Source of the DNA: Diadema antillarum
Lineage: Eukaryota
DNA: 64,000 nucleotides
Direction: 5' to 3'
Assembly (NCBI RefSeq): GCF_040938485.1
Contig: NW_027271250.1
Span: 1,302,001-1,366,000 of the forward strand
Positions 5,638 through 14,600 of this stretch are shown in pieces (position 1 is the stretch's first letter; every line of letters begins with the position of its first letter). A program made the translations under genes and the position numbers. Below the pieces are notes generated by a model that saw nothing but the letters and a program-made list of their open reading frames with translations, had not been told where the DNA came from and did no database searches.

Positions 5638-8600
5638 CTGAAAAAAAAAATATACATGAGCTGTTTTAATGACACAAATGCAGATAGACCCTTCCAGAAA
5701 CACATCCTCATGTATGAATAGGAATTCTGAGACCAGATTTTTTTGTTATTTAAACCTAGTGAAGTATGCATACATTTTTCAAGTTTGACAATCTACTGTT
5801 ATTCATCATTCCTATCATATATAATCTTAATTGATGCAATGCTGGTATCCACATCCCAATGCTTCAACACTGGACAACTTCTGAAAGGTCATGAAAGGGC
5901 AATTCCACTCAATGTTCATGTGAACTATAATGGTGAGAAGAGAAGACTTTTATTAAAATCCAACAAAACATGATGAAGCTATTGAACATTTAAATTTTCT
6001 ATGATTTCACGAAGCCACAAAATTAGTCACAGCTCTCCCAATGGTTTGTACACACTAACAGAAGTTGGGAAATTGGAGTTATTATGCAGAAGAGAAAATT
6101 TTGACATCTTGATCCCTATAGTAACCTGTCTCTTTAATTTCACACCATGAACAAATCACTTTCTCCACTTTCATGAGAATCTAAATGCAAGGTGGCATGG
6201 TTGTCCTACTTCCTAGATCTAGAGATGAATGCCTGAGAAATAGGTTTAAACATGTTGGGCCCTGACCTTCGGGCTCTATGGGGGACATCAGAACCTTTTG
6301 ATTTTTCCAATCCCTGTCCTCACAAATGATTGCTGCCATATTTGGTTGAAATCAGACCATGTGTATTTGAAGATGAGGAAAATGTTATAGTGCAAAGGAT
6401 AGCCAGGCAATGCACAACCGAAGACCGAAAAAAGTGATAGCAACAGATGTCAAATCTTGGAGAAGAGCTACAAATAATCCAGTTCACCTTTCTGATTTCT
6501 ATTTCGAATATCTTAAGTATCATTAGAATACTTTAAGCTATTCTCAGGAAATATCCTGGTGGCAAACCATTAACATGTGCAGCTGAATGAATGGCTATTC
6601 TGAAAACATATAACCTTTGGCACCATAATGTGTTACAGGCATACAATTCACAGAAGCATGATGTTCATTGTCTTGCACATAATTATGTCTGAGAAAAAGA
6701 ATTGATAAAAAGTGCATACCACAGTAGCTTTCATCGGACATGTCTCCACAGTCATTCACTCCATCACAAACGACACTGTTGTTTCCTCCGGGGACACACT
6801 GGCCATTGTTACAGGTGAACTCACTGGGAGCACAGGTGGCATTCCTGGGTGGTGTTGGGCTTGGAGTTTCTATTTCACAAGCAGAGGAAAGAATGCTTAA
6901 CAGAGTTAATACCAAAATGGGGAGGGGGGTCTGAACACAGCATGTCAAAGCAAGCTAAAAAAATCACACAGTGAATCAAAATCTGTTGAAAAAGAACAGG
7001 AAGCATGCTACAGCCATGCTTGTATTTTGCCAAGGGGCTGGCATATGAAAACAGGCTCATTATGGCATATATACATTTTAGTGTTCAACATCACAACGTC
7101 AACTGCTTTGTCTTTGTATGTCACATTCAATATAATTCTGGGAGGTGTTGTATTTCAGTTGTGATGCAGGGCCCCTTGGCAGAGCAGTTCCGAGTGAGCT
7201 GAAAGGGCTACCCTGATAACAGAAAACGGAATAAATAAATAAATAGATAAATAAATAGAAAAATGAATTCTAGTGTGTTCTGAAATAGCTGTATCTAATT
7301 TTTCCCCTCATTGTTGTTTTGTGAATGATATCATTTACAAAATGGGCATGCTGCTGACCCCTTTCAGTTCGCCCCCAGGTGAATAGCAATAGTCAGCAAA
7401 CAGTATCAACCAGGCACATTGTGACATACAAAGAAGGATTTCTCCCTGTGTCTGTTGACATGGTAGATCCTGACACCTGCCACTAAGACCCCCTATTAAA
7501 CAGCAGTGCTATGACATTCCTTACCACATCCTTGCTCATCACTGTTGTCTCCTTCACCACAGTCCACATCACCGTCACACACAAAGGATTCTGGGATACA
7601 CACACCCTCACTGCACTGGAACTCACTGGGACCACATGTGACTGCAACTATAAGTAAAAACATGAGGCAAAATATACAGATCTTTACTTGTTCCCATCCT
7701 GGGAAAAAGAAAGAGTGAAGAAAAGAAAAAAGCTGTTCAATTCTGACATCTAGTCTCAAACACAACTGAGTATACACTCTTGCAATAAGAAATTGTCTGC
7801 ATGTAGGTCCTTCTAGTTAATAGAAAGATTAAACGAGAACTTACCTGTTTGAAGTTTGATCTTTATTTTATGAGGGAGTTGGAGAAAGAATTCACAGTGA
7901 GAGCCCGCTCAACGCGCGCGCAGTCATACTTCGTAGCAACAAGATGTGACTTCTGTCAGAGTGGAAAGATTGAGAACTTACTTGAAGTTGATCTATACAT
8001 TTTGTAATAGTATTCATGCCATGGGAAGGGAGAGGAGGGACTGTGAATTCTTTCTCCAACTCCCTCATAAAATAAAGATCAAACTTCAAACAGGTAAGTT
8101 CTCGTTTAATCTTTTTTTTTTTATTTCGTGAGTTTACGCAAGAACTCACAGTGAGATTTTGTAGCACAGAAGTCACATTTGTTCCAACTGAACAAACTCA
8201 AGCATGCACAATGGCAAGCAAAATGTAAGCTCAAATTACCTTGGTCTGAGGCCATTATTCCCTCACAATGAGTTGTGACAGGCACTGTCCCTCTTCTTGT
8301 AGAGGTTTGTCGTAGAATTTACGGAATGTTCGTTCTTTTGACCAGCCTGCTTTTGCGAGGATCAGAGGAATAGGTGCATCCGCCCTGTTTGCTGCTGAGC
8401 TAGATGCTGCTCGGGTTGAATGTGCACTGAACATTGTGGTGTCAATGCCAGCGCCAGTCATGATTTCTTTGATCCATCGAGAAATTGTCTGTGCCGTTAC
8501 TCTCTTGAAAGGCTTGCGAAAACTAATGAAGAGATGACTTTCCTCTCCTCGGATCTCTTTGGTTCTCCGAAGGTAGGCCTTAATGTATGTAACTACACAC

Positions 8601-11600
8601 AAACGTCTGTCTGGGGGGTACGCTTTCAAAAGTACGTCCAATCCAAAATTCCCAGGTCTAGACTGCTTAAGATGTTCATTAACTTTGAATGACACCATAG
8701 ATTGTTTGAGAATCATGCTGTCTAGATTCAGGCAATGCAAAGTCTGTACCCTCTGGGTGGATATCAAGGCCAGTAACATGCACAGCTTCATTGTTAATTG
8801 CTTCAAGCTAAGCGAGTTAGCGGGAGCTAGACTTCTCAAATATCTAAAAACAATATTCACGTCCCAAATTTCCGAATACCGCGGCCTTGGGGGCCTGAGC
8901 TGGAACACACCTCTCATAAAACGAGAGAGAAGCGGATGAGTGCTGACAGTAAATTGTTCATCCTCTAACACTAGAAAGGTAGCAAGTGCACTCCGTGCTG
9001 AGTTAATAGCTGAATAGCTCAAGTTCTCTTCATAAAACATGTGTGTAAAAAACTCCAAAACAAAATTAATCTTGGCATGAAGGTGACTTTCCTTCTTAAG
9101 TGTACAAAACTTTCTCCATTTCCTTATATATGTACAATATTGTCTTTGGGTTGATGCCCTCCAAGATGCTGCCAAGATGTCCACCGTTCTGCTGCTCATG
9201 CCAGAGTTCTCGAACGGCAGCTTCAAAACCTGCAACATAACAGATCAAGGCAAGCGTGTAAAGGGTGCGGTTCCCCAGATACGGGTTGCGTAATCAAATT
9301 CCTGTGTCTAGGAATTAAGAGTGGTTCATCTTTAAGCATTCTCCTCATGCGAGGAAACCACGCTTGCGTAGGCCAGTTTGGGACAATCAAGAGACCATGT
9401 GCCTTGTCGTTTTCTATTTTTTGGAGACATTTGGGGATGAGGCAGAAAGGAGGGAATGCGTAGAAATACAGATCACCCCAATTCAGAGTGAATGCATCCA
9501 CAGAAACCGCATCTGGGTCAGGCAGCCACGTAACGTACGCAGGCAGCTGCTTATTGAGTCTGGACGCGAAAAGATCAATTTGGGGAGTACCACATTTCTT
9601 AGTGATATCAGTAAAAACTTTCTTATTCAGCATCCATTCTGTTCTGTCATTAAAATGACGAGATCTCCTGTCTGCTTCTGTATTGTCACGACCTGGTAAA
9701 TAGGCTGCTGTGATCCAGATATTCCTTTCCTTACACCAAACCCAAATGTCTCGTGCTGCCCTGTCGCAGGCTCGAGATTTAATGCCTCCCATATTGTTCA
9801 GGTAGGCTACAGCTGTTGTGTTGTCAGTTCTAATGAGCACATGTGTATCATGCAGGTGGCCGCAAAATGACTTCAAACCAAGCCCTGCAGCTAAGATTTC
9901 AAGATAGTTGATTTCATTGTTTAGAGCATGCACTATCTCCTGATCATCCCATCTACCGCCAGTTTCATTGCTTAAATCAGTGGCACCCCATCCTTGCCCA
10001 CTGGCGTCAGTACGTAGCTCTAAAGCTGGCCGATCTCGACTAATTGGTGCCGACTGGCAGTGAATGTTATTGAACCACCACATTAACTCCTGTTTAGAAG
10101 CTTCAGACAAATTCATAGGTCGATCAAAATGCCCTTTGCTTGATTTTAGTGCAAGAATTTTGTCTCTTTCTAGGTTACGATAGAAGAGGGGGCCATATTG
10201 AATAGCAGGGAAAGTAGCAATCAGTTTCCCAATGACCTGCGCCACCTGCCTGATAGTAGGGTTTTGTTTCCCTAGCAATTCCGCACATACTGCCCTGATA
10301 TTTTGACATTTCTCATGCGGGAGCGTTATAGTCATGCTTTCCGAATCCAAGATAAACCCCAAAAATTGGAGCCGTTGCTGAGGCTTTAGGATAGATTTCT
10401 CTGAATGAATGACAAAACCAAGGTCAGAGAGCAGTTTTGTGGTTGCTTGCACCGCTTCTAGTGCTTGTGATTCAGTTTCACCGATTATGAGAGTGTCATC
10501 TAAATACCCCACAACCAGGTGGCCTGCCTGTCGCAGCTTTGCGAACACCGGCTTCATAAGCTTTGTGAAGAGCCTAGGCGCTGTACTAAGGCCATTGGGG
10601 AGTACCTTAAATTGCCAACATTTCTCGTGCCAGACAAATCTCAAATACTTGCGATATGAGGGGTGAACAGGGACAGAGTAGTAGGCATCTCGAAGGTCGA
10701 TTGAGGCAAGGTAACAACCAGGGGAAATTAGGGTTGTAGCCGTATGGATGTTATCCATTTTGAAATGCTGTACATTCAGACTGTCATTGAGGTCCGATAA
10801 ATCTAAAATTAGGCGTATGTCCCCATTTTTCTTTGGGCGTGTAAAGATATTGGACACAAATTCTCCAGCCACATGCTGGCATTCTTCGATTACGCCTTTC
10901 TCGGCCAGTTTTCGAATTTCAATGTCAATCTTGCTCTCCTCAGCATTACCCACTCTGTAGTGGTAAGGCGGTTTACCTCTGTGAGGTGGGCTATACACCT
11001 CTTGAAATTCAAGTTTGTAACCGCTAATTGCATCAAGTATGAAAGGATCAGTGGTAATATGATTCCACTGTTTGCTAAAATGCCTCAATCGACCCCCAAC
11101 GGGCAGGTCTAATGGAACATCTACATGTTCAATGTCAAAAACTGACTGTACAGTGTGAGTAGATTGTGTATTTCCACAACAAGAGCTAGGCCTGCAACTT
11201 ACCTCCTTGGGTAGTGCAGTTACTTTCTCCGTGACACAGTGTTTGGCTTGGCTGGGGTTGCTGTCGAGTAGCTCTGCCCCCGGTTGTGCGCATGAGCTGG
11301 AGGTGGGCGAGTCTGCGTGTGCGGGGCTGAATGTCTGTATCCCCGCTGCTGCTGGCCTAAAAAAGGCCTGGATGTATCGCCAGCTGCGAGCCAGCCTGCG
11401 TTCCGATATTGCTTCCGGCTGAATCCACCGCTGGCCGTGCGCTTGTATGGGTGGTACGGCTGATGAGTAGATCTCTTAGCCTGGCCTTTAACCACACTAA
11501 AGGCAGCCCTATTCTCCTCCTTGAGATCTTTTACACGTTGTCCCAAGTCATCACCGAATAGAAACGCGGTCACGGGCGTAGTAGGCTTGCACAGATGTGC

Positions 11601-14600
11601 GTAAGCAGCGTTCATATCGGGCTTGATCAGCTCCTTTCTCAAGCAATTCATCTCGTAATTGGCATTACAGAGTAAAGCGAGTGCGTCCTGTTGCGCCTCG
11701 TTCAAGTCAGTAGGAAGAGTTTGTAGGAACGCACACAGCCCGCGGGTAAGAGATTTCTGTACTCTCTGCAGCTTAACGTCTCTGCTGCGCGTAGTCTGTG
11801 TCACATTATCCCAAATCACTGGATTGACTTTAGGGACTAGTAAGTTGGGGCAATTGCTCGGTGCTGGGTAGTTTGCCGCTGACTCTTCCATAGATTTTTC
11901 CTCCAGACAATGGGAGATGAGATAATTTGTAGAATTTGCCAATTCGTCATTGATAGGGTCGCCCACACAGGCGGAGACCGCAAATTTTGCAGCAAAGGAT
12001 GGCACTTGTACTGGCCGCCCCGTGAGCTCTGCGGGTGCGTAACCCGCTGCCGCCGCAGGGAAATCGCATTCATCCCCACTGTAGCTGCTGCCGCCGTGGT
12101 CGTCGTGCAGCGTACCGCGTGCTTGCGTACTATCGTCTGTAGCACACACATCCATGCCCCCAAACGGCACACCACCGTGGTTTTCTGCGGTACAAGCCGT
12201 GCCAACATGGCCGGCACGTAGTTGCTGTTGTTGGATACGAGTAGGCTGAGACGGCAGTATTTCCATGACCTTTTCAAACATGGATTCGAGTTCAGAAAGG
12301 CGGGAAAGCACCTCCGCGTCCGTCTTCTCTTTAGGGGGAGCTGCCTTCTTACTTAGGCCCGGTTTGGTGGGTTTTTTAAGGGTTTTCCCATTCCCTTCTT
12401 TCTTTGTTGGAGCCTTAATACTAGCCGGCGAACACTTGGGTTCATGATGCACGGCTGTAGTCACCATCGCCACGACAGACTTAGCTGTATGCAGGGCGCT
12501 CGTACTAGTGGTGCCACCCACGACAGGCTTAGCTGTATGCTGTGGGGGAGCGGAAAGCGGAATTTCCATCCCGCGATATCTCGTGAATAAAAATCCACTT
12601 CCGAAGCAAAGTCAGCTCTAACTGAGCTATAAATAATAACAATCCACAATATGATAAGATATTGCGAAGATGCACAGTTAAAAGGACGAATAAAACTGGA
12701 TTTAGACTGCGATGAGGGAACTTAGCCCCTCGTGCAAAACGTGCGAAGAAGCGATATGACTGCGCGCGCGTTGAGCGGGCTCTCACTGTGAGTTCTTGCG
12801 TAAACTCACGAAATAAAATGGCTTTTTGGCACTGAAATCATAGTATGTGATTTCGAATACTTAGTAGCAAAGGCATTGGAGAGATTGGCAGATTAAAAGT
12901 TGGGTATGATCCATCCATTACATCAGAGAGATGATCATATCTTTGCTTGGGGGTAAAAATATCAAAATCTTCCTCCTTCGAGTTCTTTGTTTATATTTGT
13001 TTATCAAATTGGACTTCAATCCAAGCAGGAAAGTTCTTATTTTCTATGCAGTAAAATGAGTATTGATCACCAACAGTGGGGCATGGTTAACTGTAAACCC
13101 AATCTTTGTTATTGACACAACCGTGCAGACCTCCACCTTCAAAGATCTTCTGAGGGTCGACCATTTTACTTAATTTACAAAATCGACACTTTGCACACAT
13201 TTCCAATTTCTCTAGACCTTTTACACAGAATTGGGACAAGGACTGCAAGATTACAGATTAAGTAGCACATGAAGTAAACATTTAGTTTGTCAGTTTTTTG
13301 CATGTAAACAATTAAGTGGATTCAGTTTATTAGACATCAAATTAACATATTGATATGCCTACAGTTACTGTTGTAAGTGGGTCACAGGCATACAAAGATC
13401 TAAAGTTTTTTTTAAAAAACAAATATACATCCGTAAGTTTTGCTTTTAACTTTTATGGAGCGGTTCCACATGTTTCCATTTGCTGTGTGTGAACCTACAT
13501 ATATGGGGTACACTCTTCTTTCAAAATGATAATCTAAATGCCACATTGGGAAGTTTAATTCAACAGGATATTTTGCATTATAAACTGGTACCATCTGTTC
13601 AAGTTTGCAGTAAGAGACTATGAGACGACATACCACAACCGACTTCGTCCGAAGAGTCCGTGCAATCTGGCGTGCCGTCGCAGTAAAAGTCGGCATCAAT
13701 GCAGAGACCACTGCTGGCACACTCAAACTCTTCTGGATCACACTCGTATGCTGGTTGAGAGAGACAAAAGGGGGTGATGCAGGAGACATATTGTGCATTG
13801 AAGCTGTAGACTCATCAACACAAGTGTGGTTGTGAGGTCTGTTTTACAACAGCCCTGTATATGACTTATAGAATGAGAGGCCTAAACAAATTCATCACAA
13901 CTAAACACAGCAACAAATGGTTACATCTTAGTATAACAATTATGCTAAAAATGTCCACAATACATATTTACAATTTGTGCTCATTATGCCAATAGTCCTA
14001 AACTAATGTACATCATACCACATATCTCTAACAGTTAATAAATGTAAGTTTTAAAACCAGACCATATTTTCACTTGATTTTCTAGTGAAGAGCATGCAGT
14101 TCTCAATCTAATTTAGATAATAGGGATGCTACAGTTTTGGTTGAGATGGGGCTTTAGATTTTATTCCTTTTGTTTATGTGTGAGATAATGAGAAACTACT
14201 TATGAAATATGAAAGAGCATACAACTTGAAGAGGAATTCAGAGTTTATTCGATGAAAATCGGTTTTGAGATGACTGAGATATCCAAAATAAAGTGGTCCT
14301 AATACAAGTGGGACCCATCTTTTGTTGGGACCACAACCAAAACTATACCATCCCTTAAAGTATGTAATCATCATTAAGAACAAAAAAATAAACAAATAAT
14401 CAAAATGACAACAGTCTGGACGAAGCTTCTGTCAGGATGCATTCATTTCACAATCATATTTGTGAATCTAAGACGGTATGGTCTAGATCATATCACAATA
14501 TTTAATTTTCACAAAGACATGGTCATATGATAATCTCATTTCTTTATACACATATGCAAAGGGTTTACAGGACATGTCATTTAAAAGATTAAACAAGACA

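What the first reader, a model, noticed from the sequence alone, without database searches (positions are those of the whole stretch)
9230..11202. A retrotransposon 'intron' that is the entire RT gene: in-frame splice from the Gag-RT leader to the tyrosine recombinase
Seen: a perfect consensus donor AAG GAG|GTAAGT lies 17 nt after the gag stop, in phase 0 of the ORF2 frame (exon ends 11203). A pyrimidine-rich acceptor (cttgccttgatctgttatgttgCAG|GTT) coincides with the end of ORF2 and is in phase 0 of the YR ORF (exon starts 9229). The 1973-nt intron removes RT, RNase H and MT and joins ...VTALPKE to [10 protein letters not shown]... in frame. Known: Dictyostelium DIRS-1 uses splicing to express downstream ORFs, but by removing ORF1. 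Inference: here splicing would toggle between Gag-RT (~1115 aa, unspliced) and Gag-YR (~780 aa, spliced), tethering the recombinase to Gag. From memory, metazoan DIRS1-like ORF2s often show EVS before RT and end in C/W-x-L-S-G, which would be the protein shadows of these two splice sites; I cannot verify that here. I am not aware of this scheme being described.
Basis: partly seen in the sequence, partly recalled or inferred. Interest (0 to 1): 0.85.

Follow-up and report, generated by a model that had tools for sequence, protein, structure and literature searches.

The report
Spliced-out polymerase gene in DIRS retrotransposon
This sea-urchin DIRS jumping gene carries a deeply conserved pair of splice signals that cut out its whole reverse-transcriptase gene and join the stretch after gag in frame to its recombinase, which probably explains how these elements make their recombinase.

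Summary
The window holds an intact 5.0-kb DIRS1-like retrotransposon on the minus strand (12818..7819).

- **The intron.** A consensus donor (AAG GAG|GTAAGT) lies 17 nt after the gag stop, in phase 0 of the RT frame. An acceptor (TGTTGCAG|GTT) lies in phase 0 of the recombinase (YR) frame. Removing the 1973-nt intron (11202..9230) keeps the frame open.
- **More than chance.** Across 21 intact DIRS families from other animals, the best donor after gag is in phase 0 in 19. The best acceptor before the YR core is in phase 0 in all 21.
- **Same splice in a sea urchin.** RefSeq annotates exactly this intron in Strongylocentrotus purpuratus; XP_030847864.1 reads ...TPLPKE|VMRQHFENRG.
- **Spliced product in a coral.** In a Porites DIRS family, read-derived contigs from several runs carry the precise GT-AG-deleted gag-YR junction.
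- **Gap.** I found no RNA data for this species, so splicing of this copy is inferred. No intronless copy occurs in its genome.
- **Likely mechanism.** Unspliced RNA gives Gag and, by -1 frameshift at T TTT TTA, Gag-Pol (1115 aa). Spliced RNA gives Gag and Gag-YR (780 aa).
- **Novelty.** No paper I could search describes this. The scan reached the same reading on three other copies in this genome (s1-208688, s1-208693, s1-211217).

The parts
7819..12818 (-). Complete DIRS1-like retrotransposon (5000 bp); one of at least 27 full-length copies at 98-100% identity in this genome
   Evidence: ITR/ICR repeats, ORFs and Pfam hits, own-genome copies
12755..12807 (-). Left inverted terminal repeat
   Evidence: 53-nt arm, 91% complementary to 7876-7928
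11220..12569 (-). ORF1, gag-like protein (449 aa)
   Evidence: No Pfam hit. It is 32% identical (E 2e-33) to the gag of a Porites DIRS element, and tblastn matches gag in many DIRS loci
11358..11364 (-). Slippery heptamer T TTT TTA in the gag frame, inside the roughly 85-codon gag/ORF2 overlap; candidate -1 frameshift site that feeds both Gag-Pol and Gag-YR
   Evidence: The heptamer ends exactly at gag codon 404. ORF2 has no Met before the RT domain. The same heptamer occurs in the Porites element and in L094
11203..11219 (-). 17-nt end of exon 1 between the gag stop and the donor (reads ..ALPKE in the ORF2 frame)
11197..11202 (-). 5' splice site GTAAGT (AAGGAG|GTAAGT), phase 0 of ORF2
   Evidence: Rank 2 of 238 GT sites. 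A homologous phase-0 donor lies 2-44 nt after the gag stop in 19 of 21 intact families
9230..11202 (-). Optional 1973-nt intron containing RT, RNase H and the methyltransferase-like domain (ORF2)
   Evidence: RVT_1 hit at 1.5e-22. The homologous intron is annotated in S. purpuratus and is removed in Porites contigs
9230..9259 (-). 3' splice region: candidate branch points (A at 9259 and 9245), moderate pyrimidine tract, and CAG (AG at 9231-9230)
   Evidence: The acceptor ranks 3 of 339 AG sites. TGTTGCAG|GTT is conserved in L032 and in S. purpuratus L033/L040
8255..9229 (-). Exon 2: tyrosine recombinase reading frame from Val4 ([10 protein letters not shown]...) to its stop. The YR ORF's own ATG (9238-9236) lies inside the intron
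   Evidence: Phage_integrase and Phage_int_SAM_4 hits; exon 2 is open, 975 nt with a single terminal stop
8040..8156 (-). Internal complementary region (ICR), complementary to both termini
   Evidence: Inverted repeats I1 and I3
7876..7928 (-). Right inverted terminal repeat

Best explanation
The element is an active-looking DIRS1-like tyrosine-recombinase retrotransposon whose whole pol gene (RT/RNase H/MT, 11202..9230) is an alternatively spliced spliceosomal intron. Unspliced full-length RNA serves as the template for reverse transcription. It is also the mRNA for Gag and, through a -1 ribosomal frameshift at T TTT TTA (11364-11358), for a Gag-Pol fusion of 1115 aa. Spliced RNA lacks pol. 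In it the same frameshifted frame runs 52 codons to the donor and continues in phase into the recombinase, giving a Gag-YR fusion of 780 aa. Shown here: the signals, their phases and the open frames in this copy; the conservation of donor, acceptor and phase across many families; and the existence of the spliced form in relatives. Inferred: that this copy's RNA is spliced in vivo, and that YR is made as a frameshift fusion rather than by reinitiation after gag.
For: (1) Signals and phases in the window.
(2) Comparative test on 28 DIRS families (below 80% nucleotide identity to one another) from S. purpuratus, Porites and 80 metagenome loci. In 21 intact representatives, the best donor between the gag stop and RT is in phase 0 of ORF2 in 19. 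One of the two exceptions, L045, also carries a phase-0 GAG|GTAGGT. The donor scores at least 4.5 in 86% of families, against 1% of 328 control windows inside ORF2. The phase bias has p about 5e-7. The best acceptor in the open part of the YR frame is in phase 0 in 21 of 21 (p about 1e-10).
(3) The constraint acts on nucleotides, not on the protein. The residue after Val varies (S/G/N/T/C/R), yet +5 G is mostly kept, Ser is always AGY, and the Val codon is mostly GTR.
(4) The YR frame opens within 0-30 nt of the acceptor in most families. In several, the acceptor's own TAG is the stop that opens it.
(5) RefSeq XP_030847864.1 of S. purpuratus joins ...ATPLPKE to VMRQHFENRG. On the genome, exon 1 ends CCCAAAGAG|GTAAGT and exon 2 starts TGTTGCAG|GTTATG, which are the positions homologous to this window. 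XP_011683648.1 is a 706-aa Gag-leader-YR model.
(6) In Porites, contig L031 carries gag directly followed by YR. It is collinear with a genomic copy except for a 1688-nt gap bounded by CCTCAG|GTAAAT ... CCTTTCAG|TTTGCT. Of 10 further contigs from other runs, four cross the same junction and six stop exactly at the exon end. Ten other contigs or DNA scaffolds keep the intron at the acceptor.
(7) In the spliced Porites contig, the -1 frame is open from the T TTT TTA site across the junction into YR.
Against: No RNA evidence exists for this species. The only runs found are contigs of unknown or DNA type and one library of short fragments. They show no 11203->9229 joint, and contigs run unspliced through both sites. 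No intronless copy occurs in the 1.75-Gb genome at up to 3 mismatches. The acceptor's pyrimidine tract is only moderate. RefSeq models are predictions, and I could not see their RNA support. I could not check the library type of the Porites runs, so those contigs could in principle come from retro-copied intronless DNA; that would still require splicing. Part of the acceptor conservation is forced by the overlapping ORF2 C-terminal motif (..C-C-R..). Several families have an AUG at or just after the acceptor, so YR could be translated without a Gag fusion.
Confidence: 0.8

Rival explanations
1. The intron is real and used, but the recombinase is not a Gag fusion. Spliced RNA would be a bicistronic gag-YR message. 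YR would be translated from the first AUG after the junction by reinitiation or leaky scanning. Alternatively, splicing would mainly tune the Gag:Pol ratio, as in copia.
For: S. purpuratus and L032 have an ATG one codon after the acceptor (GTT ATG). Several families have an ATG as the first codon of exon 2. In Porites the ATG is 4 codons in. RefSeq isoform X2 starts at that Met. After splicing, the gag stop lies only 17-47 nt upstream of these AUGs.
Against: Frame continuity from the ORF2 frame into the YR frame is kept in 19-21 of 21 families, even though leader length and acceptor position vary. This would be unnecessary if translation restarted. In this window the first Met after the junction is 11 codons in, downstream of residues (PFENSG) that are conserved with relatives. 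In families where the YR frame opens exactly at the acceptor, exon 2 often starts without a nearby AUG.
Confidence: 0.15
2. The donor-like and acceptor-like words are by-products of protein-coding constraint and chance. YR would be translated from its own ATG (9238) on unspliced RNA through the ordinary ORF2/YR overlap, and no splicing of this element would occur.
For: TGTTGCAGG also encodes the conserved ORF2 C-terminus C-C-R. Overlapping ORFs are the textbook description of DIRS elements. No junction appears in the available runs, and no intronless genomic copy exists.
Against: Donor strength, position and phase are conserved where the amino acids are not, with AGY-only serine codons. The control windows give a 1% rate. 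The exact homologous intron is annotated in S. purpuratus. Precise GT-AG removal is seen in Porites contigs from several runs.
Confidence: 0.05

Closest known systems
RefSeq gene models on S. purpuratus DIRS copies (LOC115926751 isoform X1, XP_030847864.1; LOC105447380, XP_011683648.1)
   Same: Same element type, with YR 56% identical. The donor follows the same ..LPKE codons and the acceptor is the same TGTTGCAG|GTT. The intron again covers all of ORF2.
   Different: They are automatic 'uncharacterized protein' models with no stated link to a retrotransposon expression strategy. They come from another species and family. I could not inspect their RNA support.
Retroviral subgenomic env mRNA, especially avian leukosis/Rous sarcoma virus, where the donor lies a few codons into gag and Env starts with Gag residues (established knowledge, from memory)
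   Same: One primary transcript. The intron removes gag-pol or pol. The splice is in frame, so a downstream protein borrows an upstream translation start. Unspliced RNA is both genome and mRNA.
   Different: Here the donor lies after gag, not before or inside its start, so Gag is kept on both RNAs. The downstream protein is the integration enzyme, not an envelope. A frameshift is needed as well. The element is a tyrosine-recombinase retrotransposon, not an LTR element.
Drosophila copia alternative splicing (Yoshioka et al. 1990; Brierley and Flavell 1990; from memory, not read here)
   Same: A retrotransposon whose pol region is an optional intron, so spliced and unspliced RNAs set the ratio of structural to enzymatic proteins.
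   Different: In copia the spliced RNA encodes only Gag and protease; no downstream enzyme is joined in frame.
Rice tungro bacilliform virus ORF IV expression by splicing (Futterer et al. 1994; from memory, not read here)
   Same: A very long intron covering most coding capacity, including RT, is removed, and a short upstream ORF is joined in frame to a downstream ORF.
   Different: It is a plant pararetrovirus. The upstream partner is a short leader ORF, and there is no frameshift and no recombinase.
Standard description of DIRS1-like elements (Piednoel et al. 2011, PMC3266345; PMC9210276)
   Same: gag, RT/RH/MT and YR ORFs with overlaps, plus ITRs and an ICR. This element fits that description.
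   Different: These papers explain YR expression only by 'ORF overlap'. The words splice and intron do not occur in PMC3266345, PMC9210276 or PMC3783388.

Membership tests
DIRS1-like retrotransposon (order DIRS) | Tyrosine recombinase instead of a DDE integrase | tested here: met
   Phage_integrase 9.8e-9 and Phage_int_SAM_4 3.7e-5 on ORF3; 1132 YR relatives, many on DIRS contigs
DIRS1-like retrotransposon (order DIRS) | RT/RNase H ORF with a C-terminal methyltransferase-like domain | tested here: met
   RVT_1 1.5e-22. ORF2 aligns over residues 1-621 with ORF2 of many DIRS loci, including the FPPF / PNWPTQ C-terminal motifs. No Pfam model matched the MT part above threshold.
DIRS1-like retrotransposon (order DIRS) | Inverted terminal repeats plus an internal complementary region matching both termini | tested here: met
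   ITRs 12755-12807 / 7876-7928; ICR 8040-8156, complementary to 7819-7898 and 12781-12818
DIRS1-like retrotransposon (order DIRS) | gag-like ORF1 | tested here: met
   Homology to the gag of Porites and S. purpuratus DIRS elements
Spliceosomal GT-AG intron (alternatively spliced) | Consensus 5' splice site | tested here: met
   AAGGAG|GTAAGT, rank 2 of 238
Spliceosomal GT-AG intron (alternatively spliced) | 3' splice site with pyrimidine tract and branch point | tested here: inconclusive
   CAG|G is present and ranks 3 of 339. The tract is 13 of 20 pyrimidines. YTNAY motifs lie at -28 and -14. The branch point was not mapped.
Spliceosomal GT-AG intron (alternatively spliced) | Exon-exon junction observed in RNA of this organism | tested here: inconclusive
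   No true RNA-seq run was available. The contigs laid show no joint and run unspliced through both sites.
Spliceosomal GT-AG intron (alternatively spliced) | Sites conserved in position and phase in diverged relatives | tested here: met
   Donor phase 0 in 19 of 21 and acceptor phase 0 in 21 of 21 families; controls at 37% and 26%
Spliceosomal GT-AG intron (alternatively spliced) | Spliced product observed in relatives | tested here: met
   Porites contigs L031, L135, L136, L140 and L141 cross the junction; the S. purpuratus RefSeq junction
Programmed -1 ribosomal frameshift (gag to ORF2 frame) | X XXY YYZ slippery heptamer in the zero frame within the overlap | tested here: met
   T TTT TTA at 11364-11358 ends at gag codon 404
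Programmed -1 ribosomal frameshift (gag to ORF2 frame) | Downstream stimulatory RNA structure and measured frameshifting | not tested
   Belongs to another finding (s1-229780); not examined here

The most novel reading that the evidence does not exclude
All metazoan DIRS1-like retrotransposons express their tyrosine recombinase only from an RNA in which the entire pol gene has been removed as a spliceosomal intron. The recombinase would be made as a Gag-recombinase fusion by the same -1 frameshift that makes Gag-Pol. Splicing would therefore decide which enzyme is tethered to Gag. A second, conserved consensus 5' splice site at the right terminus (with its U1-like complement in the ICR) would be part of the same RNA-processing control.
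Probability: 0.45. Interest if true: 0.88.

Novelty: new variant of a known kind. Interest (0 to 1): 0.78.

Why it matters
DIRS elements are widespread in animals, fungi and protists, and their replication is poorly understood. How the recombinase ORF is translated has been left as 'overlapping ORFs': it lies in a different frame from pol and in many families has no start codon of its own. A conserved pol-sized intron gives a concrete, testable answer.

It also adds a third major retroelement lineage, beside retroviruses/gypsy and copia, that uses host splicing to apportion its proteins. It predicts a Gag-tethered recombinase, which bears on where integration complexes form.

There is a practical consequence for annotation. 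Thousands of 'uncharacterized protein' gene models and repeat-library consensus sequences should be read with this intron in mind.

Tried and rejected
- **RNA evidence in this species.** The look-up of sequencing runs gave six runs, none on record as RNA. Read laying on four of them showed no 11203->9229 joint, so nothing follows either way.
- **Intronless genomic copies.** The junction pattern with up to 3 mismatches gave 0 hits in the own genome.
- **Junction region as a protein query.** P0169 residues 1-62 gave no hits. The whole-protein search found only YRs whose N-terminal extensions are the alternative-frame reading of the MT C-terminus, that is, unspliced forms.
- **P0146.** This 725-aa Montipora model turned out to be a partial RT-YR model, not Gag-YR, and has no locus on record.
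- **L121.** It looked like a second spliced contig but keeps the unspliced donor. It is an in-frame internal deletion joining the ORF2 N-terminus to YR.
- **L041-L043.** These are unspliced.
- **The 'MVS...' start of several cnidarian YRs.** I considered it as a donor shadow and rejected it; it is the other-frame reading of the conserved P-W-Y-P motif.
- **Literature.** Six full-text searches and eight papers gave no description of natural splicing in DIRS elements. Poulter and Butler 2015 is not held, and neither it nor the Goodwin and Poulter papers could be checked.
Full report
**What is in the window.** On the minus strand, 12818..7819 is a complete 5000-bp DIRS1-like retrotransposon.
- It has inverted terminal repeats (12755-12807 and 7876-7928).
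- It has an internal complementary region (8040-8156) that pairs with both termini.
- It has three ORFs, each in the -1 frame of the one before.
  - gag: 12569..11220, 449 aa.
  - ORF2: the frame is open from about 85 codons upstream of the gag stop down to 9223. It has an RVT_1 hit and no Met before the RT domain.
  - Tyrosine recombinase (YR): 9238..8255, with Phage_integrase and SAM-like N-terminal domain hits.

The genome (1.75 Gb) holds at least 27 full-length copies at 98-100% identity and about 850 candidate matches, so the family is young. Earlier notes of this scan call the genome a sea urchin. The closest YR relatives in public data are echinoderm sequences.

**The observation.**
- The gag stop is at 11222-11220.
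- Seventeen nt later comes AAG GAG|GTAAGT, with the GT at 11202 starting an ORF2 codon.
- At the other end, TGTTGCAG|GTT has its AG at 9231-9230, and exon 2 begins at 9229 on a YR codon boundary.
- The intron is 1973 nt and contains all of RT, RNase H and the MT-like domain.
- The YR ORF's own ATG (9238) lies inside the intron, and the YR frame is closed by a TGA at 9247-9245 just upstream.
- The reading across the junction is ...VTALPKE|[10 protein letters not shown]....
- A T TTT TTA heptamer sits in the gag zero frame at 11364-11358. A -1 slip there gives open frames of 1115 aa (unspliced, Gag-Pol) and 780 aa (spliced, Gag-YR).
- On a simple position-weight matrix, the donor ranks 2 of 238 GT sites and the acceptor 3 of 339 AG sites on the sense strand.

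**Direct tests in this species led nowhere.**
- Laying four of them showed contigs running unspliced through both sites and no 11203->9229 joint.
- No intronless copy of the junction exists in the genome.

None of these results speaks against splicing, and none supports it.

**Relatives: the same intron is annotated in another sea urchin.** A protein search with the YR led to a family from Strongylocentrotus purpuratus whose YR is 56% identical.
- Its RefSeq isoform XP_030847864.1 (367 aa) reads ...EEIATPLPKE|VMRQHFENRG....
- On the Spur_5.0 genome, exon 1 ends CCC AAA GAG|GTAAGT, 20 nt after the gag stop.
- Exon 2 starts after TTATGTTGCAG|GTT ATG.
- These are exactly the positions homologous to 11203 and 9229 here.
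- An older model, XP_011683648.1 (706 aa), runs from gag through ..FFRP.. (the post-frameshift reading) and ..TPLPKE| into the recombinase.
- A closer relative of unknown host (L032, YR 64% identical) has CAAGAG|GTAGGT 20 nt after its gag stop and CTCTGTTGCAG|GTT ATG.

**Relatives: the spliced form exists in read-derived assemblies.** A Logan contig from a Porites DIRS family (L031, 2514 nt) carries gag directly followed by YR, with no RT.
- Its gag is 32% identical to the gag here and has the same T TTT TTA heptamer.
- Against a genomic copy in Porites harrisoni, it is collinear except for a 1688-nt gap bounded by CCTCAG|GTAAAT and TTTTCCACCTTTCAG|TTTGCT. That is a canonical GT-AG intron.
- The donor lies 14 nt after the gag stop, in phase 0 of the -1 frame.
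- In the contig, the -1 frame is open from the slippery site across the junction into YR.
- Ten further contigs carrying this gag come from other runs. Four cross the same junction, and six end exactly at ...GGAGCCTCAG, the exon boundary. That is where an assembly graph would branch if both isoforms were present.
- Ten contigs or Tara metagenome (DNA) scaffolds carrying the YR side all keep the intron.
- I could not check the library type of the runs. Even if some contigs came from DNA, a precise GT-AG deletion implies splicing of an RNA.

**A survey across families.**
- A metagenome scan gave 80 more DIRS loci.
- I mapped gag, ORF2 and YR by tblastn and grouped the loci into 28 families at below 80% nucleotide identity.

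Results for the donor in the 21 families with an intact representative:

| Measure | Observed | Control |
|---|---|---|
| Best donor between gag stop and RT is in phase 0 of ORF2 | 19 of 21 | 37% of 328 windows of 75 nt inside ORF2 (p about 5e-7) |
| Distance of that donor from the gag stop | 2-44 nt | not applicable |
| Donor score at least 4.5 | 86% of families | 1% of control windows |

- One exception (L045) has tandem sites GAG|GTAGGTGAGT, so a phase-0 donor is present there too.
- The other exception (L062) has only a weak AAG|GTTGAA.
- The amino acid after the Val varies (S, G, N, T, C, R). Even so, +5 G is mostly kept, Ser is always encoded AGY and never TCN, and Val is mostly GTR. The constraint therefore acts on the RNA, not on the protein.

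Results for the acceptor:
- The best acceptor in the open part of the YR frame upstream of the YR core is in phase 0 in 21 of 21 families. The control rate inside YR is 26%, giving p about 1e-10.
- Acceptors occupy two places.
  - Place A is the polypyrimidine-rich codons of the MT motif F-P-P-F|S (Porites and most cnidarian-type families).
  - Place B is the ORF2 C-terminal motif C-R-L/F (TGCAG|G/A). It is used in this window, L032, S. purpuratus, L045, L046 and L123.
- The YR frame opens within 0-30 nt of the chosen acceptor in most families.
- In several families the acceptor's own TAG is the stop that opens the YR frame.

So the recombinase 'ORF' begins where the exon begins, not at a start codon.

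**Mechanism.** The best-supported reading is that one primary transcript has two fates.
- **Unspliced RNA.** It is the replication template and the mRNA for Gag and, by -1 frameshift, Gag-Pol.
- **Spliced RNA.** It keeps gag, the slippery site, the 52-codon leader, YR, the ICR and both termini, and it yields Gag and, by the same frameshift, Gag-YR.

The conservation of frame continuity across families with different leader lengths and two different acceptor positions is the main argument for translation reading across the junction. The alternative is that YR starts at an AUG just after the junction. S. purpuratus, L032 and several other families have such an AUG, so this rival is not excluded (confidence 0.15).

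That no intronless copies have accumulated in this genome suggests that spliced RNA is a poor template for retrotransposition. That point is inference only.

**What is known.**
- The open literature I could search describes DIRS ORFs as 'overlapping' and never mentions natural splicing.
- The Dictyostelium DIRS-1 papers mention only an artificial marker intron.
- Subscription reviews by Poulter and colleagues could not be read.
- The scheme resembles retroviral env splicing (in-frame in avian retroviruses), copia's pol-removing intron, and the RTBV ORF IV splice. All three comparisons are from memory.
- What is new for tyrosine-recombinase retrotransposons is the combination of a donor after gag, a frameshift, and an integration enzyme as the downstream partner.
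- Three earlier notes of this scan on other copies in the same genome reached the same reading but lacked a spliced product.

**Verdict.** Confidence that this intron is real and serves recombinase expression is 0.8. Confidence in the fusion mode is lower. I class it as a new variant of a known kind, with interest 0.78.

Noticed in passing
window 7844 (G of the GT, minus strand; AAACAG|GTAAGTTC, about 25 nt from the element's right end); complement ACTTACCTG at 8099-8091 in the ICR: This is the strongest 5' splice-site match in the whole element (score 8.7, rank 1 of 238), and it sits at the right terminus. A near-identical (C/A)AG|GTAAGT(C/T)T lies 370-600 nt after the YR stop in at least 14 other DIRS families, including Porites and S. 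purpuratus. Its complement in the ICR equals the 5' end of U1 snRNA. Its function is unknown; candidates are poly(A) control, splicing into host exons, or a terminal recombination signal.
   Followed up: partly
window 11358-11364 (minus strand): An HIV-type slippery heptamer T TTT TTA lies in the gag zero frame within the gag/ORF2 overlap. The same heptamer is present in the Porites DIRS gag (L031 1216-1222) and in L094. It is the subject of another finding (s1-229780).
   Followed up: partly
window 7496-7777 and 6595-6948 (minus strand): Exon-like ORFs encoding LDL-receptor class A repeats flank the element on the same strand. The DIRS copy therefore probably sits in an intron of a host LDLa-repeat (SCO-spondin-like) gene in sense orientation, where its splice sites could interfere with host splicing.
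   Followed up: no
L121 1268-1560: This metagenome contig carries gag, the unspliced donor and the first roughly 45 codons of ORF2, joined in frame to the YR frame, with no RT. It is an internal deletion derivative that also preserves frame continuity into the recombinase.
   Followed up: partly
window 9868-9957, 10181-10287, 10479-10545, 11071-11184, 12563-12644: Run X1 (an 'echinoderm metagenome', size-fractionated RNA-Seq) holds short adapter-flanked fragments of 37-114 nt that match the element at 95-100%. They could be small-RNA or degradome products of this family; strand and origin were not resolved.
   Followed up: no
own genome, e.g. G000:C1271:80127-81020 and the families listed: The genome carries many further DIRS families: at least 10 patterns of YR hits, each with several copies. 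One YR hit lies in a 719-aa open frame, which could be a fused or intronless form.
   Followed up: no
protein P0208 (Logan contig, 437 aa): In this DIRS copy the ORF2 C-terminus (..MACRLSGKPS..) continues in the same frame into the recombinase, so it is a natural Pol-YR in-frame variant.
   Followed up: no
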